A stretch of DNA of 64,000 nucleotides, from positions 1 through 64,000 of the forward strand of contig NW_018479939.1 in the NCBI RefSeq assembly GCF_002113885.1, written 5' to 3'. The DNA comes from Mizuhopecten yessoensis. Its lineage: Eukaryota. A program made the translations under genes and the position numbers. Positions 17,444 through 63,166 of this stretch are shown piece by piece (position 1 is the first letter of the stretch; each line of letters begins with the position of its first letter). The notes below the pieces were generated by a model. That model made no database searches. It was given only the letters and a program-made list of their open reading frames with translations, and had not been told where the DNA came from.

Positions 17444-17597
17444 CGACGAAAGGGAAAGATGTTAAGACTACAACACAGCTATGCACACTGAAACAGTGTG
17501 CATAGCTGTGTTGTAGTCTTAACATCTTTCCCTTACGTCGCACATCTTCCTCGTGCGTCGCTGTGTTGGACACTATCTCAGTGTACGTCGCTGTGTT
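17444..17597. repeat. Fold-back palindrome plus inverted satellite segment
   Basis: 47-bp arms (17444-17490 / 17494-17540, 1 mismatch) around an aaa loop, followed by ~55 bp of reverse-complement satellite. Confidence 0.9.
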
Positions 17598-36112: not shown

Positions 36113-36814
36113 TTTTATAAAAAAAATCCTCCTTTCGTAGTTTTTCTTATATTGTAAGTATGTGTATACATCACTGAGGTCTGAAGGAGAGGCTTTAATG
36201 TGCATTTTAGTTATCGATACGATGCAAAAATGCTATGTGTAAACGTTTAGGATAAAATTACAGATGTGCTCAATTACTTAGCTTGTATGCTTGTGTGTCT
36301 ATCTTGGTTCAAGCGCGGTTGTTCTGTGACTGTAAAAGTAAGTCCCATATTTTAGCGTCATTACAAACATTGAAGTACGTTTGTAAGCGTTATCGATTCT
36401 CTATCTTTATGATCAACTATTACCCGTGTACACTTAAATATACTTCAGTATATTCTGTCCTGTAATGTTAAACGTTGTTATAAACTACGTGACCCTTTCT
36501 ACAATCTAATTGTGTCTGCTATCTTTACTATCTTTGCGAGCTACGCTTCACAAACTAGTTTCTACATTCATGTGTATGCATTGATGAGTTTTTTTATTAA
36601 ATATGTCTTGAGTCTGTTATTATTATTTGTTTGTCACTTTTTTAGTATAAATTAAGTCTAAGGTAGGTGATGTTTATTGTAAATTATGACATGTGTCGGC
36701 TTTATTATAGGTTACGTGAAAAGTTTATGGATATTATCATATAGTATGTCGTGAGTTTGTGAGTTTTAATAAACTAAATAATACGTTTGAAAATGTTATT
36801 GTTTATGTGCTTTT

Positions 36815-36925
36815 CAAGACGTGCCAGGTTTGGCGCCGGAGAAAAACCGGAGTTCCTGGGGAAAAAACACCGACCGGCGGTCATACCTGGCGACTGCCCC
36901 ACGTAAGGTTCGAACCCACGACCCT
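36815..36925 (-). mobile_element. V-domain SINE fragment (copies at ~45525-45630, ~53587-53692)
   Basis: Minus strand B-box gggttcgaacc followed by the V-like core ggtgttttttccccaggaactccggtttttctcc. Confidence 0.65.
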
Positions 36926-37049
36926 GCTTATTATAAAGTATGTCATCGGCAGATGCATTCGATATGCATGTAAATATAATTATCAACTATGTTTGTAATC
37001 TTTGTTATAAAATATATTAATCACATAGCTTTATGAATTCTGACTATAA

Positions 37050-37290
37050 ACTTTGACTATGTCATAAAGTTGGGTGGTTTTTTAGCCACTATGTCATAAA
37101 GTTGGGTGTTTTATTTGACACTATGTCATAAGTTTGGGAGTTTTATTTGACACTATGTCATAAAGTTGGGTGTTTTATTAGACACTATGTCATGAAGTTG
37201 GGTGTTTTATTAGACACTATGTCATAAAGTTGGGTGTTTTATTAGACACTATGTCATCAGTTTGGGAGTTTTATTAGACACTATGTCATA
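37050..37290. repeat. Minisatellite, 32-bp unit (fewer copies at ~45750-45895 and ~53812-53957)
   Basis: gacactatgtcataaagttgggtgttttatta in tandem. Confidence 0.9.
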
Positions 37291-38880
37291 ACAGGGTGTG
37301 TTTTTTTTGTTGGTTTTTTGTCAAATATGCCTTTTATCGTTTTACGTTATAAATTGTATTCTATATGTGTAAGCCTTATTATAAACAATGAAATAAGTGA
37401 TGAATCTTAATGTTTAACCCATCCTTAGTTTGGAACTGTATAGTGTCAGGATGTGTTTCCTTTTGTTTGTTATTTGACTGGAGCATATGTTCCTATGTAT
37501 CGACTTTGGTTGCAATAATTGTCTTCCTTTGTTTTGTTAACCTTTTTTCCTAATTTATCACTTATTCCTAAAACCTACATGTTAAAGTTTTAACAATGAA
37601 AATGTTTCGAAGAAATCATTCTGTGGTTGTTTAAACCTCATGACTCGCTAAAAGTTGTTTAAAGTATTCATTGTGCAAAATCTGTCTCCATTGTGTTGAC
37701 GATCACGAAATAATTCTATTTATAGAAACTAGGTACATATCGTAGCCCCAGTTTGACCAGACAGAAGCTAAGTCGTGATAACCAACACAATATCAAGTGT
37801 GTGATCTGATTTATAAACAAGGACAGGCCTACTATTTAAAGTCTCGTTGCTCGGGTTTTACATTTTACTTGTACCGGTGTAAGTTACCGTTTCAATCATG
37901 AAGGTTATAAAAGAATAAATATTTCCATTTGATTTAGGTACATCTGTATTTTGCGGCACTTTGTGATAAATCAAGCTAGCTTGTTGATCTAGAGTTTGGC
38001 GACCGCGCTCTAAACATATGGTGGGTAAAATAATGAATAAAACTACGAAGAAATGAATCACCTATAAAAAGTTCGTTCTTAGATTCAATTTTACAACAAA
38101 ATAGTACTGCACCATATGACCATTTCGGCCATTAAGAAAAACTTAAGGAGACTTAAAGGTTAAACAAATGAAATCTCCATATCTGAAGTGTTCGGAAGCA
38201 TATATACAGCAAAAACACAGCAAAATGTGCATATAAAACATTTCATCAACGTTACAAATTTAAAAAACCTTAAACTAGTTTTTTATTACAAGATATTGAT
38301 TATTTTTTACGGGTGTCAGGTTCTTGGGTAAAATCAGTTAATTTTCATAGCTCGCAGACATTGCATAACACTACAGTCCGCAATTTTCAGCTTTTACTTT
38401 AGGTTCCTTGTCCCCTTTCTTTAGCAAAGAATTTTTCTTTCGAGAAGCTCATAACAGTAACCTAGCAGGTATTTTTTCTATTTCATTGAACCAACTATTA
38501 ACATCAGAGTTAATATATATATATGTTTCTCAATCGTTAATTCCGAGGATTGTGTCCCCCTACTGAACATGTGTACGTTATACCACGGACTTAGATAACA
38601 ATCTAATTCCATGGTTATACTGCAGTATCTGGTGGATAGTTGAAGCCTCATCAATGTTATGAGAACACGTTGTGCTTTCTCTAAGTTTCCTCATCCTCAA
38701 ACTTCCAGGGGTTACGCATTCTAAATCACGTTTTCTTCACTCTTGGAATATGTAATGACGATATCGAAGCAAGTGATTGTAAATCAAGTTTACTTGTATC
38801 ATCCACAAGGTCGCGCATTCATAGCATTGAGTTGATAACGTGAGTGAGCGTAAAGTACCTGTTGAGCTCTTACGTGAGGT

Positions 38881-38923
38881 CAATCGGGAACAGTCGGCAC
38901 TTTCCGTAAACGATTCCCGATTG
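38881..38923. mobile_element. 43-bp minimal TIR element with 9-bp TSD (second copy 47511-47553)
   Basis: TIR caatcgggaa/ttcccgattg. Perfect direct repeat acgtgaggt at 38872-38880 and 38924-38932. Confidence 0.65.
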
Positions 38924-39088
38924 ACGTGAGGTATATAAAATTTCGGCGAATTTCGATCCCTAAAAACAACATAATTATTGACAACCTCGATCGCTTATAT
39001 ATATAACCTGAATTAAAATCAAAGAAAGTTCAGTCTACAGACACTTCAACAAGCGCTTTTCTCGGTCTTTATTTGTAACATGTCTAAC

Positions 39089-39301
39089 CACAGGAACTTG
39101 AATTTCTATCAGAATGCGTTAAGGGGGTGTATATATTGGGCTTAATCAGTTCTCTGAGCTTAAATACGGTAAGGGGGGGGGGTTATATATTGGGCTTAAT
39201 CAGTTCTCTGAGCTTAAATACGGTAAGGGGGGGTATATATTGGGCTTAATCAGTTCTCTGAGCTTAAATAGACCATTCTGATAGAAATTCAAGTTCCTGT
39301 G
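39089..39301. mobile_element. MITE with 28-bp perfect TIRs, 7-bp TSD and internal ~50-bp tandem repeats (P-superfamily-like); copies 47719-47881 and partial ending 55641
   Basis: TIR cacaggaacttgaatttctatcagaatg. TSD gtctaac at 39082-39088 and 39302-39308. Confidence 0.85.
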
Positions 39302-39591
39302 GTCTAACAGAGACAGCTTACTACTAAGCTGTACATTAAACATGACTATTTTGATTTCCTATCGTGATCTTTTTGATAATGCATGTACATGTAGCATATA
39401 TATCACTGCTTCTCCAGACGCAGTTGGGTTGGTTTGGTATTCAAGAGCTTACTCCGAATAGCAAGACTTCGGTAACAGATGTCGAATGCTAACAGATAAA
39501 CTTAAATCCACGGAATTAGATTATCTAAGTCCGTGTTAAAACACAGGATTTGGTGTTGCTTCGTTATCAATACTCCGAAACTAGCCTTCAT

Positions 39592-39936
39592 CACAAGGAC
39601 CTGATGGTTTGTTACAGCTATATTTGGACCTGTTCTACGGTGTCCAGTGTAATTGTACATGTTTTGGGGGTTTAAATCGACTTTCGGTAAAATGCCACCC
39701 CAATTATTATATATATAAGACTCATTAGACAATGGATAATAATTTGTGAACCGTTTTGAGACGACCTACAAACTAGGATGTGATAAAGCGGTATATAAGA
39801 ACCTCCAATTATTATTAATTATTAGGGGTGCATTTTTACCGAAAGTCGATATAAACCCCTAAATCATGTAAAAGTACTCTGAACGCCTTAGTTTATAGGT
39901 CCAAACATAGCTCTAACACATCATCAGGTCCCTGTG
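39592..39936. mobile_element. Older fold-back MITE with ~110-bp imperfect arms (copies 48172-48516, 55932-56167)
   Basis: cacaaggacctgatg...tcgactttcggtaaaatgc vs gcatttttaccgaaagtcga...catcaggtccctgtg. Confidence 0.75.
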
Positions 39937-40274
39937 GCATTGAGAGTGTGATATAACTTGCATTTGACCTGGATTTACATGGCTGTGTCGTCGATTAAGA
40001 AGAAACACTTACCCTTTCAGGACGCCTGATCTCATTCCATTGAACTTTTCCAACGGTCTCCGTGTAAATCTTTAATTTGCTCATATTTTGCTTTAGTTTT
40101 CTCAGTTTAGCGTTTAAATTGAAGTTTTATATACACTTCGTTATTCTGCTGTTGTTTTATGCGATGTAAGCAGTTATGGTGTTGTTTAGGCCTGTCGGTG
40201 GATTCCTGAACTATCAGAGAACATAGGAGGAGTCGATATCTTACTGTGAATTAATATTGTAACGGACTCTATAT

Positions 40275-40780
40275 TTCATTGATGATCTTCTTCATATATA
40301 ATTTCGGTGGCAACGTGTCAAGACATTCTAACAGAATGTTGACATACCCATGGACACAAACTGTGCCCTTATTTTGGACGACATTCTTTTTTCAAATTTG
40401 GATAAAATGATAAAAGACCTTAATGGACAGGTAAAAACGACATTGCCTTATTCCTCAACTTGACTTTTAGATATGAAAAAAATCTGTTTGTACCACCCGT
40501 AACTTAAAATCAAGGATACTACAGACGCTTTTACATGTAGATCAGCAGCTTATCTCGATCTTAACTTACGTACAGCAGGACCCACAGGACAATTTGATTT
40601 TATGATCATGAACTTTCCTTTTCTTCGTAGTAACAGCCCTGCATTCCCATGCTCACGTGTTTCAGTTATTCATTATTCACGGACTTGACTCGAAAAACCA
40701 GATAGCCGGGACAGATATCAAAATACTGATGGAAAAACTTACAATACTGGTTTTCGAGAGATGCACGTTGATGAAGACGT
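40275..40780 (+). mobile_element. Penelope-like retroelement RT relic (copies ~48855-49358, ~56475-56980)
   Basis: Broken translation IPMDTNCALILDDILF, NLTFRY, LKIKDTTD, SAAYLDL, FDFMIMNFPFLRSNSPA. These match the Penelope RT motifs GIPMGTNCAPLLADLFL / FRYIDD / EIKDTT / ASYLDL / FNF.IVNFPFL.SNIP. Confidence 0.8.
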
Positions 40781-41051
40781 GAAATTACTTAAATTTAACT
40801 GAAATTTAATTAGCGGAAGTCCTCGAAAAGGCAACAAGCTGTAACTCTTTGGAACACTAACTCTTCTTGACAGTTTTCAGTCTTTAAATGTTTCATTGGT
40901 TCATATATTCGGCAATAGTTTTAACAATTCTGAGTTTTGTCCATGCTCAATGATGTTATTAACGTGTATGCTGACGGTAGCTGTGTGCTTCTGAGGGACA
41001 TAATAATCAGTAGTTATGTAGTGAATTCTGGATCAAGCTAAACATTAATGG

Positions 41052-41445
41052 TGGTTTGGTTTGGTTTAATTTCGTTAACAGCTAAGGTCATTTAAGAACA
41101 TGCCTCCATGTGTGTCGTGTATGCGTGCTTGCGTGTGTTGTATGCAAGAGATAGGACATGTTGGCGCAGTTGGCGTGTTTGCCTCCTTGTGATAGCGCGG
41201 ATCTGATGCCGACTTTATAGTGCGATCTCACTGAAATAAAATGCCGAAGACACCCAGCACAGCATTCTGCCCAGTCCCATTATACTTACAACGGGTGAAC
41301 CAGTGGTTGCCATTCCCCTAAATGCTGAACGTTAAGCAGGGAAAAACAACTACCAATTTTTAAGGACTTTGGTATGTCCCGGCCTTGGGACAGAACCAAT
41401 TGCCTTCCTCACCTGGGCGAACGCTCACTGTTAAAGCCAATAGTG
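41052..41445 (-). mobile_element. tRNA-derived SINE (Meta-like core); copies ~49630-50005 and ~57252-57627
   Basis: Reverse-complement homolog of 27818-28183. Confidence 0.8.
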
Positions 41446-41984
41446 AGGTGTTGCCAAGCAAGGCGCTAGGAAATAAAAAGAAGTTAGATGTAGACAGAAA
41501 TCTTAAAAAAACCAAATATTGCAATGTATGCAGCTGATTTATTTTGGTCGCTTTTGTGTCCCCAAATAGGGGACACAAAAGCAAATCCCCAATTCTGCAG
41601 GGGGTTCCCTCATAAGCCGCGTCCATGCGATACAACGATACATGCGGTGTGTGACAGCAAGTGTATTTTTTCCCGATCCCCCACCTGCAGGGTGGACATT
41701 AATAGTGGAAATATTTATCAACGTTATGTATATATGTGATAAAATGATCAAGCCTACATATTATTTGTGACAATTGTATCAAATTATTGGTGCCAGGTGT
41801 ATCATGACTAGATCTACACAACATATACAATACTTGTTACACCTGCCACCAGCTATCACACCTTGATACATATACATGCTGTATGTGTATCAAGATGAGA
41901 CAGCTGCTGACATAGTACATCAACTCATGTATCGTCATGGTCATTTTAACAAAGAGTAAAATATATGGTTAATGCCACTGTAAA

Positions 41985-43000
41985 GCTTATCTTGTATCCA
42001 AGGTCAATACGACGTTCATACAGGTACAGTACCATCTACATGTACCTGATATCTACTGTATAAACAGCAAAGTCAATCTTGTATCCAAGGTCAATACCAT
42101 GTTCGTACAGGTACAGTACCATCTACCTTATATCTATTGTATAAACAGCAAAGTCAATCTTGTATCTAACGTCAATACCATGTACATGCAGGTACAGTAC
42201 CATCTACCTTATATATACTGCATAAACAACAAAGTCAATCTTGTATCTAACGTCAATATCGTGTACATANATGCGATACAACGATACATGCGGTGTGTGA
42301 CAGCAAGTGTATTTTTTCCCGATCCCCCACCTGCAGGGTGGACATTAATAGTGGAAATATTTATCAACGTTATGTATATATGTGATAAAATGATCAAGCC
42401 TACATATTATTTGTGACAATTGTATCAAATTATTGGTGCCAGGTGTATCATGACTAGATCTACACAACATATACAATACTTGTTACACCTGCCACCAGCT
42501 ATCACACCTTGATACATATACATGCTGTATGTGTATCAAGATGAGACAGCTGCTGACATAGTACATCAACTCATGTATCGTCATGGTCATTTTAACAAAG
42601 AGTAAAATATATGGTTAATGCCACTGTAAAGCTTATCTTGTATCCAAGGTCAATACGACGTTCATACAGGTACAGTACCATCTACATGTACCTGATATCT
42701 ACTGTATAAACAGCAAAGTCAATCTTGTATCCAAGGTCAATACCATGTTCGTACAGGTACAGTACCATCTACCTTATATCTATTGCATAAACAGCAAAGT
42801 CAATCTTGTATCTAACGTCAATACCATGTACATACAGGTACAGTACCATCTACCTTATATATACTGCATAAACAACAAAGTCAATCTTGTATCTAACGTC
42901 AATATCGTGTACATACAGGTACAGTACCATCTACCGTATATCCAAAGTCAAGGTCACGTAAACTGTATAAAAAGCAAAGTCAATCTTGTATCTGACAAGG
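41985..43000. repeat. 81/84-bp minisatellite, interrupted by an assembly duplication (copies ~50468-51085, ~58090-58625)
   Basis: Unit gtcaatcttgtatctaacgtcaataccatgtacatacaggtacagtaccatctaccttatatctactgtataaacagcaaa. Copy number differs between the segmental copies. Confidence 0.9.
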
Positions 43001-43436
43001 TCATCGAGATATTCAGGTACAGCACATTTCATCATATATATCAAAAGTCAAGGTCAAAGACATATACAAGTACAATACAATCAATATTGCTTCTATGATA
43101 GAAGTCATACTTGTTTTCAGTACAATTAACTCTGCATTATGTTCAAGGTCACAGACAAACCATCTATAGTGTATCTACATTGTATAAGGTGAAGGTCACA
43201 GACACACAGGTACAGTATCACCTTTATTGTCGTTTCTTTGGCCAAGATCATAGACACACAGGTCTTTATCAAATCTATAATCATACCAGAAAAATAAATT
43301 TTGAATGCATGATTTCATAATTTTATTGTGGTATGGTAATCCTTAACCACTGAGTGTTTTGAAGAGAGTTAAACATTTTATACTTGTTCTCTATCACATA
43401 ATATCAGACTCTCATACATAGAATTATTGATTGGTG

Positions 43437-43505
43437 CTAAGAATTATCAGTAACTTTTGTTGTGATTCTTAAACCATGCATATCCTTTATCTGTTCTTTG
43501 AGTGC
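43437..43505 (-). pseudogene. BOLA3: Duplicated BOLA3 terminal coding exon, copy 1 (ALKEQIKDMHGLRITTKVTDNS*)
   Basis: Intact acceptor ttttctgattttAG, 69 bp, in-frame TAG, AATAAA at 43327-43322. The duplicated unit has no upstream exons. Confidence 0.85.
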
Positions 43506-43514
43506 CTAAAATCA

Positions 43515-44902
43515 GAAAACAATAGAACATCATAAATAATCACAAAACAATAGACCATCATAAATAATCATGAAACAATAGACAATCATAAATGATCACA
43601 AAACAATAGACCTCCATAAATAATCACAATACAATAGACCATCATAAATGATAATAAAACAATAGACCACCATAAATAATCACAAAAAAAATAACCACCA
43701 AAAATAATCACAAAACAAAAGGCAATCATAAATAATCATGAAACAATAAATAATCACAAAACAAAAGACCACAATAAATAATCACAAAACAATACCCAAT
43801 CATATACAATCACAAAACAATAGACCACCATAAATAATCACAATACAATAGACCATCATAAATAATAATAAATCAATAGAACCACCATAAATTATCACAA
43901 AACAATAGACAATCATATACAATCACAAAACAATAGGCAACCCTAAATAATCACAAAAAATAAACCACCAGAAGTAATCACAAAACAATAGGCAATTATA
44001 AATAATCATGAAACAATAAATAATCATAAAACAATAGACCACCATAAATTATCACAAAACAATAAACAATCATATATAATCACAAAACAATAGACCACCA
44101 TAAATAATCACAAAACAATAGACCATCATAAATAATCACAAAACAATAGAAAACCTTAAATAATCACAAAACAATAGACAATCATAAATAATTACAAAAT
44201 TATAGAAAATCTTAAATAATCACAAAAAAATAGACAATCATAAGTAATCACAAAACAATAGACAATCATAAATAATCATTAAACAATAGACAACCCTAAA
44301 TAATCACAAAACAATAGATCACCTTAAATAATCACAAAACAATAGACAACCATAAATAATCACAAAACAATAGCCAATCATAAATAATCACAAAACAATA
44401 GACCTTCATAAATAATCATTAAACAATAGACAACCCTAAATAATCACAAAACAATAGACAGCCCTAAATAATCACAAAACAATAGACCTTCATAAATAAT
44501 CACGAAACAATAGACAATCATAAATAATCACAAAACAATAAAAAACCTTAAATAATTACAAAACAATAGACAATCATAAGTAGTCACAACACAATAGACA
44601 ATCATAAATAATCATTAAACAATAGACAACCCTAAACAATCCCCAAATAATAGACCACCTTAATTAATCACAAAACAATAGAAAATCATAAATAATCACA
44701 AAACAATAGACAACCCTAAATAATCACAAAACAATAGACAATCATAAGTAATCACAAAACAATATACTATCATAAATAATCATTAAACAATAGACAACCC
44801 TAAATAATCACAAAACAATAGACCACCTTAAATAATCACAAAACAATAGACAATCATAAATAATCATGAATCAATAGACAATCATAAGTAATCACAAAAC
44901 AT
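43515..44902. repeat. 28-bp minisatellite (duplicated BOLA3 last-intron repeat)
   Basis: acaaaacaatagacaatcataaataatc in tandem, more diverged than the 62003-62925 array. Confidence 0.95.
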
Positions 44903-45002
44903 TGCCATAAAAAGGGTATTTGGGACGTGAAGCTATACAGCTTATGATTTACAAATATTTTCTAGTTTAAACTATCTCTCCAGTGTGTATCGGTATAATA
45001 AA

Positions 45003-45149
45003 ACGGTTAAAGTATGGGGTTGAGGCATATATAGCAAGTTTCTGGTGTCCCTTGACCATGCCTATTTCCCTCGGCTTCGCCTCGGGAAATCGACCTGGTC
45101 TCGGGACACCAGAAACTTGCTATATCCCTCAATCCCATAATCTAACTGT
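45003..45149. mobile_element. Palindromic non-autonomous element near the duplication junction (copy 53065-53211)
   Basis: Arms atatagcaagtttctggtgtccc / gggacaccagaaacttgctatat around a cctcggcttcgcctcgg centre. The structure recalls Crypton-associated palindromic elements, but the family call is tentative. Confidence 0.7.
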
Positions 45150-51100: not shown

Positions 51101-51517
51101 CAGCACATTTCATCATATATATCAAAAGTCAAGGTCAAAGACATATACAAGTACAATACAATCAATATTGCTTCTATGATAGAAGTCATACTTGTTTTCA
51201 GTACAATTAACTCTGCATTATGTTCAAGGTCACAGACAAACCATCTATAGTGTATCTACATTGTATAAGGTGAAGGTCACAGACACACAGGTACAGTATC
51301 ACCTTTATTGTCGTTTCTTTGGCCAAGATCATAGACACACAGGTCTTTATCAAATCTATAATCATACCAGAAAAATAAATTTTGAATGCATGATTTCATA
51401 ATTTTATTGTGGTATGGTAATCCTTAACCACTGAGTGTTTTGAAGAGAGTAAAACATTTTATACTTGTTCTCTATCACATAATATCAGACTCTCATACAA
51501 AGAATTATTGATTTGTG

Positions 51518-51586
51518 CTAAGAATTATCAGTTACTTTTGTTGTGATTCTTAAACCATGCATATCCTTTATCTGTTCTTTGAGTGC
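51518..51586 (-). pseudogene. BOLA3: Duplicated BOLA3 terminal coding exon, copy 2 (ALKEQIKDMHGLRITTKVTDNS*)
   Basis: Intact acceptor, 69 bp, TAG, AATAAA at 51408-51403. Confidence 0.85.
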
Positions 51587-51595
51587 CTAAAATCA

Positions 51596-52964
51596 GAAAA
51601 CAATAGAACATCATAAATAATCACAAAACAATAGACCATCATAAATAATCATGAAACAATAGACAATCATAAATGATAACAAAACAATAGACCTCCATAA
51701 ATAATCACAATACAATAGACCATTATAAATGATAATAAAACAATAGACCACCATAAATAATCACAAAAAAAATAACCACCAAAAATAATCACAAAACAAA
51801 AGGGAATCATAAATAATCATGAAACAATAAATAATCACAAAACAAAAGACCACAATAAATAATCACAAAACAATACCCAATCATATATAATCACAAAACA
51901 ATAGACCACCATAAATAATCACAATACAATAGACCATCATAAATAATAATAAAACAATAGAACCACCATAAATAATCACAAAACAATAGACAATCATATA
52001 CAATCACAAAACAATAGGCAACCCTAAATAATCACAAAAAAATAAACCACCAGAAGTAATCACAAAACAATAGGCAATTATAAATAATCATGAAACAATA
52101 AATAATCATAAAACAATAGACCACCATAAATTATCACAAAACAATAGACAATCATAAATAATCACAAAACAATAGAAAACCTTAAATAATTACAAAACAA
52201 TAAACAATCATCAGTAATCACAAAACAATAGACAATCATAAATAATCATTAAACAATAGACCATCATAAATAATCACAAAACAATAGAAAACCTTAAATA
52301 ATCACGAAACAATAGACAATCATAAATAATCACAAAACAATAGAAAACCTTAAATAATTACAATACAATATACAATCATAAGTAATCACAAAACAAAAGA
52401 CAATCATAAATAATCATTAAACAATAGACAACCCTAAATAATCACAAAACAATAGACCTTGATAAATAGTCACGAAACAATAGACAATCATAAATAATCA
52501 CAAAACAATAGAAAACCTTAAATAATTACAAAACAATAGACAATCATAAGTAGTCACAACACAATAGACAGCCCTAAATAATCATTAAACAATAGACAAC
52601 TCTAAATAATTACAAAACAATAGACAATCATAAGTAGTCACAACACAATAGACAATCATAAATAATCATTAAACAATAGACAACCCTAAATAATCACAAA
52701 ACAATAGACCTTGATAAATAGTCACGAAACAATAGACAATCATAAATAATCACAAAACAATAGAAAACCTTAAATAATTACAAAACAATAGACAATCATA
52801 AGTAGTCATGAGATCACAAAACAATAGACAATGATAAATAATCATTAAACAATAGACAACCCTAAATAATCACAAAACAATAGACCACCTTAAATAATCA
52901 CAAAACAATAGACAATCATAAATAATCATGAAACAATAGACAATCATAAGTAATCACAAAACAT
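51596..52964. repeat. 28-bp minisatellite, copy 2
   Basis: Same unit as 43515-44902. Confidence 0.95.
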
Positions 52965-55306
52965 TGCCATAAAAAGGGTATTTGGGACGTGAAGCTATAC
53001 AGCTTATGATTTACAAATATTTTCTAGTTTAAACTATCTCTCCAGTGTGTATCGGTATAATAAAACGGTTAAAGTATGGGGTTGAGGCATATATAGCAAG
53101 TTTCTGGTGTCCCTTGACCATGCCTATTTCCCTCGGCTTCGCCTCGGGAAATCGACCTGGTCTCGGGACACCAGAAACTTGCTATATCCCTCAATCCCAT
53201 AATCTAACTGTATACTAAGTATATTCTGTCCTATCATGTTAACGTTGTTAAAAACTACGTGACCCTTTCTACAATTTACTTGTGTCTGCTATCTTTACAT
53301 CTTTACGAGCTACGCTACACAAACTAGTTTCTACATCCATGTGTATGCATTGATGAGTTTTATTATTAAATATGTCTTGAGTTTGTAATTATTAATTGTT
53401 TGTCACTTTTTTAGTATAAATTAAGTCAAAGGTAGGTGACATTTATTGTAAATCATGTCATATATCAGCTTTACTATAGATTACGTGAAAAGTTTATGGA
53501 TGTTATCATGTAGTATGTCGTGAGTTTGTGAGTTTTAATAAACTATGTCATACGTTTGAAAATGTTATTGTTTATGTACTTTTCAATACGGCCAGGTTTG
53601 GCGCCGGAGAAAACCGGAGTTCATGGGGAAAAAACACCGACCGGCGGTCATACCTGGCGACTGCCCCACGTAAGGTTCGAACCCACGACCCTATTTATTA
53701 TAAAGTATGTCATCGACAGAATTTCGATATGCATGTAAATATAATTATCAACTATGTTTGTTATCTTTGTTATACAACTATCACATAGCTTTATGAAATC
53801 TGACTATTAACTTTGACTATGTCATAAAGTTGGGTGTTTTATTAGACACTATGTCATAAAGTTGGGTGTTTTATCAGACACTATGTCATAAGTTTGGGAG
53901 TTTTATTAGACACTATGTCGTAAATTTGGGAGTTTTATTATGACACTATGTCATAACTTTTCAGGGGGGTTTTTTGGGGTTTTTTTTTTTTTGTCAAATA
54001 TGCCTTTTATCGTTTTACGTTATAAATTGTATTCTATATGTGTAAGCCTTATTATAAACAACGAAATAAGTCATGAATTTTATTGTTTAGCCCATCCTTA
54101 GTTTGGAACTGTATATTGTCAAGATGTCTTTTCCTTTTGTTTGTTATTTGTCTGGAGCATATGTTCCTATGTATCGACTTTGGTTGCAATAATTGTCTTC
54201 CTTTATTTTTATTTTTATTTATTTTTTTCCTAATTTATCACTTATACCTAAAACCTACATGTTAAAGTTTTAATGATGAAAATGTTTNTGGTTTTTTGGG
54301 TTGTTTTTTTTTTTTTTTTTTGTCAAATATGCCTTTTATCGTTTTACGTTATAAATTGTATTCTATATGTGTAAGCCTTATTATAAACAACGAAATAAGT
54401 CATGAATTTTATTGTTTAGCCCATCCTTAGTGTGGAACTGTATATTGTCAAGATGTCTTTTCCTTTTGTTTGTTATTTGTCTGGAGCATATGTTCCTATG
54501 TATCGACTTTGGTTGCAATAATTGTCTTCCTTTATTTTTATTTTTATTTATTTTTTTCCTAATTTATCACTTATACCTAAAACCTACATGTTAAAGTTTT
54601 AATGATGAAAATGTTTCGAAGAAACCATTCTGTGGTTGTTTAAACTCAGGACTCGCTAAAAGTTGTTTAAAGTATTCATTGTGCAAAATCTGTCTCCATT
54701 GTGTTGATGATCACGAAATAATTCTATTTATAGAAACTAGGTACATATCGTAGCCCCAGTTTGACAAGACAGAAGCTAAGTCGTGATAACCAACACAATA
54801 TCAAGTGTGTGATCTGATTTATAAACTAGGACAGGCCTACTATTTAAAGTCTCGTTGCTCGGGTTTTACATTTTACTTGTACCGGTGTAAGTTACCGTTT
54901 CAATCATGAAGGTTATAAAAGAATAAATATTTCCATTTGATTTAGGTACATCTGTATTTTGCGGCACTTTGTGATAAATCAAGCTAGCTTGTTGATCTAG
55001 AGTTTGGCGACCGCGCTCTAAACATATGGTGGGTAAAATAATGAATAAAACTACGAAGAAATGAATCACCTATAAAAAGTTCGTTCTTAGATTCAATTTT
55101 ACAACAAAATAGTACTGCACCATATGACCATTTCGGCCATTAAGAAAAACTTAAGGAGACTTAAAGGTTAAACAAATGAAATCTCCATATCTGAAGTGTT
55201 CGGAAGCATATATACAGCAAAAACACAGCAAAATGTGCATATAAAACATTTCATCAACGTTACAAATTTAAAAAACCTTAAACTAGTTTTTTATTACAAG
55301 ATATTG

Positions 55307-55518
55307 NNNNNNNNNNNNNNNNNNNNNNNNNNNNNNNNNNNNNNNNNNNNNNNNNNNNNNNNNNNNNNNNNNNNNNNNNNNNNNNNNNNNNNNNNNNNNN
55401 NNNNNNNNNNNNNNNNNNNNNNNNNNNNNNNNNNNNNNNNNNNNNNNNNNNNNNNNNNNNNNNNNNNNNNNNNNNNNNNNNNNNNNNNNNNNNNNNNNNN
55501 NNNNNNNNNNNNNNNNNN
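55307..55518. other. Assembly gap (212 N)
   Basis: N run. Single-N joins are also present at 42270 and 54288. Confidence 1.
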
Positions 55519-58500
55519 GGGGGGTATATATTGGGCTTAATCAGTTCTCTGAGCTTAAATACGGTAAGGGGGGTATATATTGGGCTTAATCAGTTCTCTG
55601 AGCTTAAATAGACCATTCTGATAGAAATTCAAGTTCCTGTGGTCTAACAGAGACAGCTTACTACTAAGCTGTACATTAAACATGACTATTTTGATTTCCT
55701 ATCGTGATCTTTTTGATAATGCATGTACATGTAGCATATATATCACTGCTTCTCCAGACGCAGTTGGGTTGGTTTGGTATTCAAGAGCTTACTCCGAATA
55801 GCAAGACTTCGGTAACAGATGTCGAATGCTAACAGATAAACTTAAATCCACGGAATTAGATTATCTAAGTCCGTGTTAAAACACAGGATTTGGTGTTGCT
55901 TCGTTATCAATACTCCGAAACTAGCCTTCATCACAAGGACCTGATGGTTTGTTACAGCTATATTTGGACCTGTTCTACGGTGTCCAGTGTAATTGTACAA
56001 GTTTTAGGGGTTTAAATCGACTTTCCCCTAATGAGTCTCGTATATATAATAATTGGGGTGGCATTTTTGCCGAAAGTCGATATTAACCCCTAAAACATGT
56101 AAAAGTACTTTGAACGCCTTAGTTTATAGGTCCAAATATAGCTCTAACAAATTATCAGGTCCCTGTGGCATTGGGAGTGTGATATAACTTGCATTTGACC
56201 TGGATTTACATGGCTGTGTAGTCGATTAAGAAGAAACACTTACCCTTTCAGAACGCCTTGTCTCATTCCATTGAACTTTTCCAACGGTCTCCGTGTAAAT
56301 CTTTAATTTGCTCATATTTTGCTGTTTTACATACACTTCGTTATTATACTGTTATTTTATGCAATGTAAGCAGTTATGGTGTTGTTTAGGCCTGTCGGTG
56401 GATTCCTGAACTATCAGAGAACATAGGAGGAGTCGATATCTTACTGTGAATTAATATTGTAACGGACTCTATATTTCATTGATGATCTTCTTCATATATA
56501 ATTTCGGTGGCAACGTGTCAAGAATTTCTAACAGGATGTTGACATACCCATGGACACAAACTGTGCCCTTATTTTGGACGACATTCTTTTTTCAAATTTG
56601 GATAAAATGATAAAAGACCTTAATGGACAGGTAAAAACGACATTGCATTATTCCTCAACTTGACTTTTAGATATGAAAAAAATCTGTTTGTACCACCCGT
56701 AACTTAAAATCAAGGATACTACAGACGCTTTTATATGTAGATCAGCAGCTTATCTCGATCTTAACATACGTACAGCAGGACCCACAGGACAATTTGATTT
56801 TATGATCGTGAACTTTCCTTTTCTTCGTAGTAACAGCCCTGCATTCCCATGTTCACGTGTTTCAGTTATTCATATATTCACGGACTTGACTCGAAAAACC
56901 AGATAGCCGGGACAGATATCAAAATACTGATGGAAAAACTTACAATACTGGTTTTCGAGAGATGCACGTTGATGAAGACGTGAAATTACTTAAATTTAAC
57001 TGAAATTTAATTAGCGGAAGTCCTCGAAAAGGCAACAAGCTGTAACTCTTTGGAACACTAACTCTTCTTGACAGTTTTCAGTCTTTAAATGTTTCATTGG
57101 TTCATATATTCGCCAATAGTTTTAACAATTCTGAGTTGTGTCCCTGCTCATTGATGTTATTAACGTGTATGCTGACGGTAACTGTGTGCTTCTGAGGGAC
57201 ATAATAATCAGTAGTTATGTAGTGAATTCTGGATCAAGCTAAACATTAATGGTGGTTTGGTTTGGTTTAATTTTGTTAACAGCTAAGGTCATTTAAGAAC
57301 ATGCCTCCATGTGTGTCGTGTATGCGTGCTTGCGTGTGTTGTATGCAAGAGATAGGACATGTTGGCGCAGTTGGCGTGTTTGCCTCCTTGTGATAGCGCG
57401 GATCTGATGCCGACTTTATAGTGCCTCTCACTGAAATAAATGCCGAAGACACCCAGATCAGTATTCCGCCGAGTCACATTATACTTACAACAGGTGAACC
57501 AGTGGTTGCCATTCCTCTAAATGCGGAACGTTAAGCAGGGAAAAACAACAACCAATTTTTAAGGACTTTGGTATGTCCCGGCCTGGGGACAGAACCATTG
57601 CCTTCCTCACTGCTAAAGCCAATAGTGAGGTGTTGCCAAGCAAGGCGCTAGGAAATAAAAAGAAGTTAGATGTAGAAAGAAATCAAAAAACCCAAATATT
57701 GCAATGGGTGCAGCAGATTTATTTTGGTCGCTTTTGGGACACAAAAGCAAATCCCCAATTCTGCAGGGGGTTCCCTCATAAGCCGCCTCCGACGATACAT
57801 GCGGTGTGTAACAGCAAGTGTATTTTTCCCCCATCCCCTACCTGCAGAGTGGACATTAATAGTGGAAATATTTATCAACGTTATGTATATATGTGATAAA
57901 ATGATCAAGCATACATATTATTTGTGACAATTGTATCAAGGTATCAAATTATTGGTGCCAGGTGTATCGTGACTAGATCTACTCAACATATACAATACTT
58001 GTTACACCCGTCACCAGCTACATGTATCACACATTGATACATATGTACATGCTGTATGTGTATCAAGGTGAGACAGCTGCTGACATAGTAAATCTTGTAT
58101 CTAACAAGGTCAATACCAGGTACATACAGGTACAGTACCATCTACCTTATACCAACTGTATAAACAGCAAAGTCAATCTTGTATCTAACAAGGTCAATAC
58201 CATGTACATACAGGTACAGTACCATCTACCTTATATCTACTGTATAAACAACAAAGTCAATCTTGTATCTAACGTCAATACCTTGTACGTACAGGTATAG
58301 TACCATCTACTTTATATCTACTGTATAAACAGCAAAGTCAATCTTGTATCTAACGTCAATACCATGTACATTCAGGTACAGTACCATCTACCTTATATCT
58401 ACTGTATAAACAGCCAAGTCAATCTTGTATCTAACGTCAATACCATGTACATACAGGTACAGTACCATCTACTTTATATCCAAAGTCAAGGTCATGTATA

Positions 58501-60435
58501 CTGTATAAACAGCAAAGCCAATCTTGTATCCAAGGTCAATACCATGTACATACAGGTACAGTACCATCTACCTTATATCTACTGCATAAACAGCAAAGTC
58601 AATCTTGTATCTGACAAGGTCATGGAGATATACAGGTACAGCACATTTCATCATATATATCAAAAGTCAAGGTCAAAGACATATACAAGTACAAGTACAA
58701 TACAGTCAATATTGTTTCTATGATAGAAGTCATGGACATACTTGTTTACAGTACAATTAACTCTGCATTATGTTCAAGATCACAGACAAACCATCTATAG
58801 TGTATCTACATTGTATAAGGTGAAGGTCACAGACACACAGGTACAGCATCACCTATATTGTTGTTTATTTGGCCAAGATCATAGACACAACAGTTAAAGT
58901 ACCATTCTGTATCTACATTGTTAATGTAAGGTCAAGGTCAGTCATACAGGTACAGTGCCATCCATATTGTTTCTGTAGTCAAGGTCACAACCATCATATA
59001 TAATTATACATTACCATCCACTTTGTATATACATAAAATGCCACAAAAACATACTGGTACAGTACCATCCACACAGAATCTACATTGTAAATGTAAGGTC
59101 AAGGTCAAGCATACAGGTACAGTGCCATCCATATTGTTTCTGTGGTCAAGGTCACAGACATTATATATACCCGGGTAATTATACATTATCATCCACTTTG
59201 TATCGAAGGGGAATGCCACAGAAACATCAACAAGATTATTGCTTGGTTTATATATCATAATTTAATTGTCAAATCCAGATCAATCCCAGTTACAAAAACT
59301 GATAGGTTGAGATGTCAACATATAATTTTATAAAATAATGAAACTCTCTACTCTTGTACAGTTTTTGAAACAGAAGGTATTTATCTGAGGGGAGACAAAA
59401 AATATTTAAATAAAATCTTGCTTCAATAGTAGAGCTGTCAGAATAATCGCCGTGCTTATTATAAGCTTCTGTGGTTTAATCAATCCAATAGTAATGAGAA
59501 TTTCCAATTTTGTTTTTATACATGCATAATTGTGTTCCATAACTAAATGTTAAAAATTATCACTCAAATTAAGTCCACCATATTGTATAAAACTCTTGTT
59601 TGTAGCATAATTTTGTGCAATTATTTATACCAAAGACTATTTCAGCACTTACATGGCACATACATCACTTCAGAGGCATTGTAAATGAAGCCCACCATGA
59701 AAAGGCCGAAATTTAAAAACTATAGTTTGTTTAAATAAAATGACAGTGTTTAAATGTTACGCAACAATATGCATATACCAGTACTTGTTACTGAAAAATA
59801 TGTTGAAAGTAATGTAAGAATAATACTTATGCACAGAATATCATGATGCACCAGATACTACAACAGTGCTGTAATAATTCCCCAATCTTATCTTCATGAA
59901 ACAAACAAAATATTTCACATGTATGTAAAAAAAAAAAAACTCAATACCCAAAGTATATTATATATCGCTGCAACCATTCACGTGTTTACTTATATGTATT
60001 TCACAAACTGTATTGGTCTGTGTGTAATACCAAAAATATGTATCATTGCAGCAGTATAAATGTCAACTGAATTCAAATGTTTCTATAAAGACCGTTGTTA
60101 CTGAACTTACCGACAAGTTATTAGTGAGGTGTTTTAACGAATAATCGAGTTGTTTTTACAATTGTATTTACGTAGTATAGATCGTATTTTGAAGGTAACG
60201 TTATGTCTTCTTGAAGGAAGAAGTCCTTATCGGGACTTGCAGTTTCTACTATACGAAATGCTAAAAGAAAAGATAATTGTGCACATATCAAATGTCGTAG
60301 GGAAATGAGTTACAGTGGATAAAGTCTGGCGGTCATGGACCAAACACTCCATTCTGCACTCTTTGTTAATCGCATATTTCAGTTGGATCTGGTGCTAAAA
60401 ACGACGTTACTTAAGCTTAGACTTTCAAAAACACG

Positions 60436-60638
60436 CACAGGCATTTGATTATTTGTTTCTGTCAATCAAATTGATCCTGACAATAAGAATTCAAACCCTA
60501 CTCGTATAAAACTGATATTTTATATGAGTAGGGTGCGAGGACCATTTTTACTGACAGAAACAAAATGGTATTTTATATGAGATGAATGTGACATCTTATT
60601 GTCAGGACCATTTTAATTGACATAAAAAAATGCCTGTG
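60436..60638. mobile_element. MITE with imperfect long TIRs, CACAGG ends and probable 8-bp TSD
   Basis: cacaggcattt...tcctgacaataaga / tcttattgtcagga...aaatgcctgtg. Flanks aaaacacg / aaaacaca. Internal hairpin accctactc...gagtagggt. Confidence 0.7.
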
Positions 60639-61004
60639 AAAACACAGTATCAAATCTATTATTATGAATTATTTTTTTAAGTTGTGTTGTTGACAAATCT
60701 TTTTATTTTTCAGCTTTGAATTTGGTATTATGGATGAGGATTAACTAGATCTGCTGGAAGAATAGTTCAATGAATGTAGAATGATTAAAATATTAAAGTT
60801 CTAATTTAACATCTACATGTACTTTTCCTAAATTTGTTGCGAAAAAAGACGTCGCGCGCTATGACCGTCTTTTTTATTTTCAAAAGAGGGTCATCACCCT
60901 CTTTCAGTGTATTCGGGGTTGACGGTATGAATTCTATATATATTAATCACTGACCATATTAGTACTACATTTTTATATTAATACCCAGCCGGGTATCAAT
61001 ATAT

Positions 61005-61384
61005 AACAAATGTACAGCGGGGCTGAACAATTTACGCCCGTAGAATGCCATATAGTGTTTTATACTTTCTTACAATGAAATAATAGCTGCATCATTCTAA
61101 GAGTGGTAAGCTGACATGCTGTAAAAAATGTAGGAGAAAATCTCCGGACAAAAAATCAAATACTGAAATGAACAAAGGGCAATAACTTTTGTAAAAATCG
61201 TTGAAGCAAAATTCTTTTTAGGGAGACACAACTTCATATCATGATTATAATGTATACCAAGTTTCAAAGAGATCGGTCGAAAAATGTAGGAGGAGATTGC
61301 CAGACAAACAAAAGTTTACACAGGACGGACGGACAACCCCATACCAAAAATTTCTTCCGTCAAATTTGACGGGTGTATAAAAAT
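61005..61384 (+). mobile_element. Helentron-associated non-autonomous element (HINE/DINE-like)
   Basis: 5' aacaa...tacgcccgt subterminal motif, core aagggcaataact...ataccaagtttc...gtaggaggag, (ggac)n microsatellite, 3' hairpin ccgtcaaatttgacgg then gtgtataaaaa. Confidence 0.75.
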
Positions 61385-61923
61385 ATTCACTGTCACCTGC
61401 TAATGAATGTCATATTTATATATTAATACCCAGCCGGGTATCAATACATAAAAATGTCTCCTCGTTAGAAGCTACGTTATCGCAGCTATGACCATATCAG
61501 CCTACATGGAATACATTTTCAATAGAGAATTTCAAGTCCATTATTTAGTTGTGTTTGTTAATGGTATTTTAAGTACCATGTATGAGAGTTTACACATGCG
61601 TTCTCATACAAAAACATAATTGGTAATCCTGTTTCAGCAATGATAACAAAATGAAATAAAAGGGTCCGAATGTTGATTATATTTTTTTTTATTTCCTCTC
61701 CGTTATGTTTCATGAAAGTCTCGCAAGGTATACTTTCCTTTTAAAAAATGATTTTTCAAATCTATAATCATACCGGTAAAATAAGTTTTGAATGCATGAT
61801 TTCATTATTTTACTGTGGTATGGTAATCCTTAACCACTGAGTGTATTGAAGAGAGTTAAACATTTTATACTTGTTCTCTATCACATAATATCAGACTCTC
61901 ATACAAACAATTATTAATTAGTG

Positions 61924-61992
61924 CTAGGAATTATCAGGAACTTTTGTTGTGATTCTTAAACCATGCATGTCCTTTATCTGTTCTTTGAGTGC
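61924..61992 (-). CDS. BOLA3: BolA-like protein 3, terminal coding exon (ALKEQIKDMHGLRITTKVPDNS*)
   Basis: Acceptor AG at 61994-61993, phase 0, in frame with the upstream exon. Matches the BolA3 C-terminal motif ALK.EIK.MHGLRI.T. Confidence 0.93.
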   Translation of the reverse strand, partial: ALKEQIKDMHGLRITTKVPDNS

Positions 61993-62002
61993 CTAAAATC
62001 AG

Positions 62003-62925
62003 AAAACAATAGACCATCATAAATAATCACAAAACAATAGACCATCATAAATAATCATGAAACAATAGAAAATCATAAATAATCACAAAACAATAGACCA
62101 CCATAAATAATCACAAAACAATAGACCACCATATATAATTACAAAACAATAGAAAATTATAAATAATCACAAAACAATAGACCACCATAAGTTATCACAA
62201 AACAATAGACAATCATAAATAATCACAAAACAATAGACAATCATAAATAATCACAAAACAATAGACAATCATAAATAATCACAAAACAATAGACAATCAT
62301 AAATAATCACAAAACAATAGACAATCATAAATAATCACAAAACAATAGACAATCATAAATAATCACAAAACAATAGACAATCATAAATAATCACAAAACA
62401 ATAGACAATCATAAATAATCACAAAACAATAGACAATCATAAATAATCACAAAACAATAGACAATCATAAATAATCACAAAACAATAGACAATCATAAAT
62501 AATCACAAAACAATAGACAATCATAAATAATCACAAAACAATAGACAATCATAAATAATCACAAAACAATAGACCACCATAAATAATCACAAAACAATAG
62601 ACAATCATGAATAATCACAAAACAATAGACAATCATAAATAATCACAAAACAATAGACCACCATAAATAATCACAAAACAATAGACCACCATAAATAATT
62701 ACAAAACAATAGAAAATTATAAATAATCACAAAACAATAGACCACCATAAGTTATCACAAAACAATAGACAATCATAAATAATCACAAAACAATAGACAA
62801 CCCTAAATAATTACAAAACCATAGACAATCATAAATAATCACAAAACAATAGACAATCATAAATAATCACAAAACAATAGATAATCATAAATAATCACAA
62901 AACAATAGACCACCATAAATAATCA
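62003..62925. repeat. 28-bp minisatellite filling most of the BOLA3 last intron (61993-63077)
   Basis: Highly homogeneous central run of acaaaacaatagacaatcataaataatc. Confidence 0.95.
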
Positions 62926-63077
62926 GAGAAAATCTGCCAAAATCCTTTATTCAATTAAAAGTTGAATATACATGAAATTCATCGGGGAAAGAGGCTCTTT
63001 CATCATTGCGTTTCCAAAGTAATGTATCATAATAAATGATAAAATTATAAAGATACAGTGTGTATATAATTACTCAC

Positions 63078-63166
63078 CTCTGTAACCATTTTATGTTGTG
63101 CCACCATTCGCTTTCCTTGGAATGAATCTGCCTCTACCAATACTTCAAACATGGCTCCACAACCTC
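63078..63166 (-). CDS. BOLA3: BolA-like protein 3, penultimate exon ((G)GCGAMFEVLVEADSFQGKRMVAQHKMVTE); upstream exons are outside the window
   Basis: tttcttgtcacAG acceptor and GAG|GTGAGT donor, 89 bp. The SGGCG.M(Y/F) and F.G...V.QH.MV motifs are diagnostic of BolA3. Confidence 0.95.

What the first reader, a model, noticed from the sequence alone, without database searches (positions are those of the whole stretch)
36447..63166. BOLA3 has a tandem array of three intact terminal exons created by an 8-kb partial gene duplication
Seen: the last exon of BOLA3, with its acceptor, stop, 3' UTR and the adjacent intronic minisatellite, occurs at 61924-61992, 51518-51586 and 43437-43505. All three are on the same strand and downstream of the single donor at 63077. 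Both extra copies keep the acceptor and frame and differ at the protein level only by P>T (KVPDNS vs KVTDNS). Established: BOLA3 is a mitochondrial Fe-S cluster assembly factor. Inference: the locus could produce alternative last exons or 3' UTRs, or the copies are simply young and not yet decayed.
Basis: partly seen in the sequence, partly recalled or inferred. Interest (0 to 1): 0.72.

Follow-up and report, generated by a model that had tools for sequence, protein, structure and literature searches.

The report
Silent duplicated BOLA3 last exons, scallop
In the Yesso scallop assembly the 3' end of the BOLA3 gene sits in a young 8-kb tandem repeat that carries one or two spare copies of the last exon. 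The RNA sampled uses only the original exon, so this is an ordinary, probably copy-number-variable duplication and not a new way of making protein variants.

Summary
The window is Mizuhopecten yessoensis scaffold C76612, and the gene is bolA-like 3 (XP_021340526.1) on the minus strand. All keep the acceptor, frame and stop. The proximal copy ends KVPDNS and the two distal copies end KVTDNS.

The duplication is real. Units diverge 5-7%. A junction links the intron-3 minisatellite, a complete 247-bp high-copy hairpin element and the unit start. DNA contigs from two other individuals carry the distal type.

The count of three is not secure. The array is stitched across three N joints, two of them with duplicated contig ends. 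Away from the last-exon and minisatellite segment, the assembled middle unit is 100% identical to one neighbour or the other over kilobases. Contig word depth gives about 1.6 distal copies per proximal copy in one individual and about 0.9 in another.

Only 172 nt of a 3' UTR of at least 529 nt is duplicated, because the distal units lack 2.86 kb. RNA contigs from two runs join exon 3 to the proximal exon with no distal-type letters. Exon divergence (3-4 of 69) equals flank divergence, and about 65% of neutrally drifting copies would still look intact.

Verdict: young, lineage-specific (absent in Pecten maximus), silent pseudo-exons. Low interest.

The parts
63078..63166 (-). BOLA3 exon 3 (…GGCGAMFEVLVEADSFQGKRMVAQHKMVTE), with a single gt donor at 63077
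   Evidence: the loose end of an RNA contig at 61994 reads into this exon
61997..62925 (.). 28-bp minisatellite (33 copies) that fills intron 3 of the functional gene
   Evidence: Intron 3 is only 127 bp with no array in Pecten maximus.
61924..61992 (-). Proximal (P-type) last exon, KVPDNS*, the one used in mRNA
61395..61923 (-). 3' UTR covered without mismatch by RNA contigs. Only 61752-61923 lies inside the duplicated unit.
   Evidence: records 16 and 24. The end at 61395 coincides with a repeat edge, so it is a minimum.
58894..61751 (.). 2.86-kb segment present only in unit 3 and absent from units 1 and 2. It holds single-copy DNA plus a very high-copy element at about 60068-61435, and it is partly covered in RNA runs.
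   Evidence: DNA joint 58889>61752 in X1 and X2
53211..62942 (.). Unit 3 (proximal), continuous with exon 3
55307..55518 (.). Assembly gap inside unit 3. Flanks are collinear with units 1 and 2, and the gap stands for about 840-880 bp there.
53980..54616 (.). Single-N joint (54288) flanked by a 308-bp near-identical duplicate, an unmerged contig overlap
52964..53210 (.). Junction 2: a complete 247-bp hairpin repeat element between the minisatellite and the unit start, 100% identical to junction 1
51591..52963 (.). Minisatellite of unit 2 (about 48 copies)
51518..51586 (-). Middle (T-type) last-exon copy, KVTDNS*
45149..53210 (.). Unit 2 (8062 bp). Apart from its exon/minisatellite end, which is 89-99% like unit 1, it is a mosaic that is 100% identical to unit 3 or to unit 1 over long blocks.
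44902..45148 (.). Junction 1: the same 247-bp hairpin element
43510..44901 (.). Minisatellite of unit 1 (about 49 copies)
43437..43505 (-). Distal (T-type) last-exon copy, KVTDNS*
36439..45148 (.). Unit 1 (distal). It is 8710 bp as written and about 8064 bp without the joint artefact. Its left edge at 36439 abuts unique downstream DNA.
41625..42915 (.). Single-N joint (42270) inside an 81-bp tandem repeat, flanked by a 645-bp duplicate with 2 mismatches, an unmerged contig overlap

Best explanation
This is a young, lineage-specific partial tandem duplication of the 3' end of scallop BOLA3. It covers part of the intron-3 minisatellite, the last exon, 172 nt of the UTR and about 6 kb of downstream non-coding DNA.

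Step 1 (inferred). A non-homologous duplication joined the minisatellite to DNA about 8 kb downstream. A complete 247-bp hairpin repeat element lies at the joint. The distal (T-type) lineage lost 2.86 kb that holds most of the 3' UTR and acquired P>T.

Step 2 (inferred). Unequal homologous recombination between units, most simply inside the 81-bp tandem repeat, produced a recombinant middle unit. That gives a three-unit haplotype segregating beside two-unit haplotypes.

The extra exons are not used (shown for two RNA runs). The proximal acceptor is identical and is met first, and transcripts end kilobases before the next copy. The extra exons are therefore neutral pseudo-exons. The scaffold sequence of the middle unit is partly gap-filler reuse of neighbouring contigs.
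For: Identity of the gene:
- It is bolA-like 3 of M. yessoensis, and all four exons match at 100%.

The duplication is real:
- Units differ by 5-7% in the a, d and e segments.
- An unplaced 561-bp contig spans the hairpin element into the unit start.
- The joint element is a full-length member of a family with more than 40 scored copies at 94-98% identity.
- T-type DNA contigs with the 58889>61752 joint occur in two other individuals from two studies.

The event is specific to this lineage:
- P. maximus has one last exon, a 127-bp intron 3 and no array in the 10 kb downstream.

A recombinant middle unit is plausible:
- Junction 1 and junction 2 are 100% identical.
- Unit 2 is unit-3-like in segments a and d, and unit-1-like in segment e (98.1-98.8%).
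- Unplaced contig C63069 is a third variant of segment c, close to the unit-3 type.

Copy number looks variable:
- T:P contig word depth is 32.3 against 18.6-22.2 in X1, and 9 against 7.4-11.2 in X2.

The extra exons are silent:
- RNA contigs are 100% P-type and one, in X19, was read into exon 3. Distal-type depth is 0 of 113.5 and 0 of 253.9 at 61806 and 61813.

The extra exons drift neutrally:
- CDS differences are 3-4 of 69 against 11 of 172 in the UTR part. Intactness is expected in 65-69% of neutral trials.
Against: - All reads evidence is from Logan contigs. Contig word depth is only a rough proxy for copy number, and contigs drop rare variants, so a minor T-type isoform below about 1-2% cannot be excluded.
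- The assembled unit 2 switches type three times (a2, c1, d2, e1'), not once. The single-crossover reading needs one gap-fill error.
- e1 and e1' differ by only 1.6%, which is within the range of alleles.
- X2 fits one T-type copy per P-type copy.
- Only two RNA runs of unknown tissue were examined.
Confidence: 0.5

Rival explanations
1. The true array has only two units, one distal T-type and one proximal P-type. The middle unit is a scaffolding and gap-closing chimera. It was built from an allelic variant of the distal exon/minisatellite contig plus reused contigs of both real units.
For: - Outside the exon/minisatellite segment (e1 vs e1', 1.6%), only two variants more than 2% apart exist at each position. 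Unit 2 is 100% identical to unit 3 over 53211-56000 and 57590-58569, and to unit 1 over 37908-40891.
- The two junctions are identical, and a single leftover contig matches both.
- e1 and e1' differ by 1.6%, which is like alleles.
- Two single-N joints show the gap closer left duplicated ends here.
- X2 shows a T:P depth of about 0.9-1.0.
Against: - X1 shows a T:P depth of about 1.5-1.7.
- A third c-segment variant exists unplaced.
- The two T-type minisatellite arrays were assembled as different sequences, 89-97% alike in the middle.
- Unit 2 reaches 8062 bp without any N.
Confidence: 0.35
2. Three fixed copies act as genuine alternative last exons. They would give a KVTDNS C-terminal variant and/or a short 3' UTR that uses the canonical AATAAA the T-type copies carry where the P-type has AGTAAA.
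For: - Acceptor, frame and stop are intact in all copies. The T-type copies have AATAAA about 110 nt after the stop.
- A low level of RNA continues downstream of the proximal exon to at least 58700 in X19.
Against: - No T-type letters or joints appear in two RNA runs with P-type depth of 113 and 254.
- Only one annotated protein isoform exists.
- Divergence in the exon equals neutral flank divergence.
- The nearest extra exon lies 10.4 kb beyond an identical acceptor.
Confidence: 0.07
3. The whole array is an artefact of uncollapsed haplotypes, and the genome has a single last exon.
For: The assembly is a fragmented short-read scaffold (82,659 contigs), with N joints and duplicated contig ends inside the array.
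Against: - P-type and T-type differ by 6% and by a 2.86-kb indel.
- A specific junction (minisatellite, hairpin element, unit start) exists as its own contig.
- Both types occur together in DNA contigs of two other individuals from other studies.
Confidence: 0.03

Closest known systems
Partial (3'-end) tandem segmental duplication / copy-number variant expanded by unequal crossing-over
   Same: The units are head-to-tail and share one junction sequence. The middle unit is a mosaic. Breakpoints lie in repeats (a minisatellite and an 81-bp array). Depth ratios appear to differ between individuals.
   Different: Copy number was inferred only from contig word depth. No long read or PCR shows the array on one molecule.
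Alternative last exons that arose by tandem exon duplication
   Same: Several same-strand copies of a terminal exon lie downstream of one donor. Each copy has an acceptor, a stop and a poly(A)-signal-like hexamer.
   Different: No transcript uses the distal copies in the RNA examined. The copies carry only a third of the UTR, and their divergence is neutral.
BOLA3 / bolA-like 3 (BolA family, PF01722), mitochondrial Fe-S cluster assembly factor
   Same: The gene has the BolA domain and a four-exon structure. It is 83% identical to P. maximus bolA-like 3 over the exon-2 query region and has the same head-to-head short-chain dehydrogenase neighbour.
   Different: The scallop gene function itself is untested. 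The M. yessoensis gene has a minisatellite-expanded intron 3 (1085 bp against 127 bp).
Tandem false duplications in short-read scaffolds (heterozygous contigs placed side by side, gap-closer reuse of repeat contigs)
   Same: Single-N joints have duplicated ends. Kilobase blocks are 100% identical between units. Leftover contigs are identical to scaffold pieces.
   Different: The units differ by 5-7% elsewhere. The junction is specific, and the distal type is found in other individuals' DNA.

Membership tests
BolA family / BOLA3 orthologue | BolA domain (PF01722) in the encoded protein | tested here: met
   The precomputed Pfam PF01722 is recorded on P0001, which is encoded 100% by the four exons.
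BolA family / BOLA3 orthologue | Orthology to an annotated BOLA3, with conserved gene structure and neighbourhood | tested here: met
   It is 83% identical to P. maximus bolA-like 3 over the exon-2 query region. Both genes have four exons, and the short-chain dehydrogenase gene lies upstream in both.
BolA family / BOLA3 orthologue | Role in mitochondrial Fe-S cluster assembly | not testable with these tools
   The role is known for human and yeast BOLA3 from established knowledge. It was not assayed here.
Tandem segmental duplication | A novel junction joining the end of the unit to its start | tested here: met
   The minisatellite end at 44901 is followed by the 247-bp element and then by sequence homologous to 36439. 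Unplaced contig C63350 covers it.
Tandem segmental duplication | Both paralogous types present in the DNA of independent individuals | tested here: met
   X1 and X2 hold P-type contigs and T-type contigs with the 58889>61752 joint.
Tandem segmental duplication | Three units on one chromosome | tested here: inconclusive
   The middle unit is a mosaic with 100% blocks. T:P depth is about 1.6 in X1 and about 0.9 in X2. No long reads were available.
Alternative last exons | Each copy has an acceptor, an open frame, a stop and a poly(A) signal | tested here: met
   T-type copies have AATAAA and the P-type has AGTAAA at the same place. The poly(A) site actually used was not determined.
Alternative last exons | Transcripts that join the common donor to each copy | tested here: not met
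   Only exon 3 to P-type exon contigs were found. There are no T-type letters in X15 or X19. Contigs can miss rare forms.
Uncollapsed-haplotype artefact | Copies differ only at allelic level and have no junction of their own | tested here: not met
   This holds for P-type against T-type: 6% divergence, a 2.86-kb indel and a specific junction. For unit 1 against unit 2 alone the feature cannot be excluded (1.6% in the exon region).

The most novel reading that the evidence does not exclude
The array is a copy-number-polymorphic set of spare terminal exons. In some tissue, stage or stress state, exon 3 would splice to a T-type exon. That would give BOLA3 a Thr-for-Pro C-terminus and a short UTR ended by the canonical AATAAA, so that copy number tunes isoform output of an Fe-S assembly factor.
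Probability: 0.05. Interest if true: 0.45.

Novelty: new member of a known kind. Interest (0 to 1): 0.15.

Why it matters
The finding matters mainly as a caution. Intact-looking duplicated exons in a stitched short-read scaffold are neither proof of three genomic copies nor of alternative splicing. If the copy-number difference between individuals holds up, the locus is a small, tidy example of duplication that starts in a minisatellite and a repeat element and then expands by unequal crossing-over in a bivalve. It has no evident consequence for BOLA3 function.

Tried and rejected
1. Weak tblastn hits (E 0.12-0.6) suggested an older relic of the last exon in each unit, at 40053-40097, 48633-48677 and 56284-56313. 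The DNA alignment shows no real similarity, so I read them as chance.
I laid 58700-62100 instead, so the exon 3 to exon 4 splice is seen only as a loose end.
3. The true 3' end of the mRNA could not be fixed. The RNA contig ends at 61395 and at about 59103-59114 coincide with DNA contig breaks at repeats, and no poly(A) signal lies near 59103.
4. The look-up of encoding contigs found no other record for P0001. No other M. yessoensis assembly was reachable.
5. There are no ORFs of 90 aa or more in the unit apart from frames through the 81-bp repeats, so no passenger gene is evident.
6. A literature search for BOLA3 plus scallop gave nothing relevant. The genome paper is not in the library, so the assembler is inferred from the sequence features only.
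Exons were handled by reference only, using the open frame around exon 2.
8. Collinearity with two P. maximus downstream elements was inconsistent and is not used, beyond suggesting that the 2.86-kb segment is ancestral.
Full report
**What the window is.** The window is contig C76612:1-64000 of a 988-Mb assembly in 82,659 contigs. The open frame around exon 2, searched by reference, hits bolA-like protein 3 of Mizuhopecten yessoensis (P0001, 106 aa, OWF36470.1 / XP_021340526.1) at 100%. It hits the Pecten maximus orthologue at 83%. tblastn places the four exons on the minus strand at 67808-67837, 64856-64993, 63078-63166 and 61924-61992, all at 100%.

**The observation.** The last exon is repeated at 51518-51586 and 43437-43505. 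In all three copies the last 18 nt before the exon, including the AG, are identical, the frame is open and the stop is kept. The proximal copy encodes ...KVPDNS and both distal copies encode ...KVTDNS. P. maximus has CCA (Pro) at that codon, so Thr is the derived state. The coordinates and the P>T statement are correct.

**Anatomy of the repeat**.
- Three head-to-tail units lie at 36439-45148, 45149-53210 and 53211-62942.
- Read on the gene's strand, each unit begins with a 28-bp minisatellite. This is the array that fills intron 3 of the live gene: 0.93 kb in unit 3 and about 1.4 kb in units 1 and 2.
- The last exon follows, then 172 nt of downstream sequence, an 81-bp tandem repeat and about 6 kb of DNA with no ORF of 90 aa or more outside the repeats.
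- At both unit junctions the minisatellite end (44901 / 52963) is followed by exactly 247 bp, and then by sequence homologous to 36439.
- The 247 bp is a complete copy of a dispersed element. At least 40 full-length copies scored at 94-98% identity out of 611 candidates, and it folds into a long hairpin (z = -10). It looks like a MITE- or SINE-like repeat.
- Unit 3 holds 2.86 kb (58894-61751) that units 1 and 2 lack.

**The assembly gap and joints.**
- The 212-N gap (55307-55518) lies in non-coding DNA of unit 3. Its flanks are collinear with both other units: 55306 pairs with 46915 and 38298, and 55519 pairs with 47753 and 39177. It therefore stands for about 840-880 bp. No reading frame crosses it, and I did not fill it.
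- Two single-N joints (42270 and 54288) are each flanked by a direct duplicate: 645 bp with 2 mismatches and 308 bp with 1 mismatch. These are contig ends that overlap but were not merged.
- Without the 646-bp artefact, unit 1 is about 8064 bp, which matches unit 2 at 8062 bp.
- The array is therefore stitched from four blocks, not read in one piece.

**Is the duplication real?** Yes, at least as two units.
- P-type (unit 3) and T-type (units 1 and 2) differ by about 6% around the exon and by the 2.86-kb indel. The unit starts differ by 7%.
- The junction exists as a separate unplaced 561-bp contig (C63350).
- In Logan contigs of two DNA runs from two other studies (X1, X2), P-type contigs and a T-type contig carrying the 58889>61752 joint are both present.
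- P. maximus, in a chromosome-scale record, has a single last exon, a 127-bp intron 3 without the minisatellite, and nothing similar in the next 10 kb. The event is therefore specific to the Mizuhopecten side.

**Are there three units?** This is unresolved.
- Along the unit, only two variants more than 2% apart exist at any place.
  - Segment a (36439-37658): unit 1 differs from units 2 and 3, which are 100% identical to each other.
  - Block 37908-39645: all three units are identical.
  - Segment c (39645-40891): units 1 and 2 are 100% identical and differ from unit 3.
  - Segment d (41141-42851): unit 1 differs from units 2 and 3, which are 100% identical.
  - Exon segment: units 1 and 2 are 98.1-98.8% alike and differ from unit 3.
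- The two junctions are 100% identical. The leftover small contigs are 100% identical to two or three places in the scaffold, which is what reuse of repeat contigs in gap filling produces.
- Evidence for a real third unit:
  - Four differences separate units 1 and 2 in the 245 bp around the exon.
  - The two T-type minisatellite arrays have different interiors.
  - Unplaced contig C63069 is a third variant of segment c. It shares the unit-3 deletion and most unit-3 letters, but has about 15 substitutions of its own and lacks the 31-bp deletion.
- If C63069 is the true c segment of unit 2, then unit 2 is unit-3-like up to the 81-bp repeat and unit-1-like after it. That is exactly the product of one unequal crossover between a two-unit pair, and it would also copy the junction unchanged.
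- Contig word depth is a rough measure. The T-specific 165-nt contig has depth 32.3 against 18.6-22.2 for P-specific contigs in X1 (ratio about 1.6). In X2 it has depth 9 against 7.4-11.2 (ratio about 0.9), and in 61876-61999 the figures are 6.16 against 5.9.
- My reading is that two- and three-unit haplotypes probably both exist. I put about 0.5-0.55 on three units being real in the reference and 0.35 on the middle unit being an assembly chimera.

**Is any extra exon used?**
- Two RNA runs gave contigs of 838 nt (X15, depth 113.5) and 826 nt (X19, depth 253.9). Both match 61395-61994 with no difference and continue as a loose end.
- The first 30 letters of that loose end are the reverse complement of the end of exon 3 (checked). 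So the X19 contig joins exon 3 to the proximal exon; the X15 overhang was not listed.
- At the diagnostic places listed (61806 and 61813), distal-type depth is 0 of 113.5 and 0 of 253.9 in RNA. It is 32.3 and 9 in the DNA runs. The 58889>61752 joint is absent from both RNA runs.
- The UTR runs at least to 61395, which is 357 nt beyond the edge of the duplicated part. RNA-run contigs also cover 59103-61116 at depth 28-32, so the transcript or read-through extends into the unit-3-only segment.
- The distal copies therefore hold about a third or less of the UTR.
- The protein cluster has one member, so no T-isoform is annotated.
- Contigs can miss rare forms, so a minor isoform below roughly 1-2% is not excluded.

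**Is intactness meaningful?**
- The exon differs at 3 of 69 (unit 1) and 4 of 69 (unit 2) positions from the proximal copy. The adjacent non-coding part differs at 11 of 172.
- In 20,000 simulated copies per rate, 65-69% keep the AG, the open frame and the stop at 5-6% random substitution.
- The two distal copies share their changes, so they count as one lineage. Nothing here calls for selection.

**Mechanism.**
- Shown: the junction structure, the 2.86-kb difference, the mosaic of the units, use of the proximal exon only, and absence of the repeat in P. maximus.
- Inferred: a first non-homologous duplication with a breakpoint in the intron-3 minisatellite and the hairpin element at the joint. 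Whether that element mediated the joint or inserted later is not known.
- Inferred: loss of 2.86 kb in the distal lineage. A weak P. maximus match at 59095-59160 hints that the segment is ancestral.
- Inferred: later unequal crossing-over gave a third, recombinant unit.
- Inferred: the distal exons stay silent because an identical acceptor is met 10.4 kb earlier and transcripts end before reaching them.

**Comparison with what is known and verdict.** This is an ordinary young partial tandem duplication, or copy-number variant, with pseudo-exons. It fails the defining test for alternative last exons, which is transcripts that use each copy. It passes the tests for a tandem duplication except the count of three. 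It is a new instance of a known kind and of low interest. Its main value is to show that the three intact exons rest partly on gap-filler reuse.

I did not build or search a joined spliced T-isoform model. The exons were handled one by one, by reference.

Noticed in passing
window 44902-45148 and 52964-53210: A 247-bp element with a long perfect-stem hairpin (DNA fold z = -10). It is present as many full-length copies at 94-98% identity across the genome (611 candidates, 40 scored), so it looks like a young MITE- or SINE-like family.
   Followed up: partly
window 60068-61435: A very high-copy repeat: DNA contig word depth reaches 10^4-10^5 in X1 and X2. It lies inside the stretch of BOLA3 3' UTR or read-through that RNA-run contigs also cover.
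   Followed up: no
window 59103-61116: RNA-run contigs (X15 depth 28, X19 depth 32) cover single-copy DNA 0.8-2.8 kb downstream of the BOLA3 stop. This could be a long UTR isoform, read-through or a separate transcript. The strand is unknown.
   Followed up: partly
window 42270 and 54288: Single-N joints flanked by near-identical direct duplicates (645 bp and 308 bp). Unmerged contig overlaps like these probably occur elsewhere in this assembly, where they would mimic short tandem duplications.
   Followed up: yes
L011 (G000:C63069, 556 bp, unplaced): A third sequence variant of the unit segment 39529-40193 / 55869-56393. It is either the true middle-unit sequence or an allele of unit 3.
   Followed up: partly
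window 9-1976, 4154-8963, 9092-19599: Large satellite arrays. A 30-bp unit is repeated about 164 times and a related 65-bp unit occurs in several blocks totalling about 10 kb, at 66-74% matches. There is also a 439-bp-period array at the window start.
   Followed up: no
window 41989-42942, 50465-51137, 58087-58612: An 81-bp tandem repeat lies just downstream of each last-exon copy. It is the likely site of the switch between unit types and of contig breaks.
   Followed up: partly
L006 about 5091-5300 (C76612:69091-69300): An exon of a short-chain dehydrogenase gene lies head-to-head upstream of BOLA3, in the same arrangement as in Pecten maximus.
   Followed up: no
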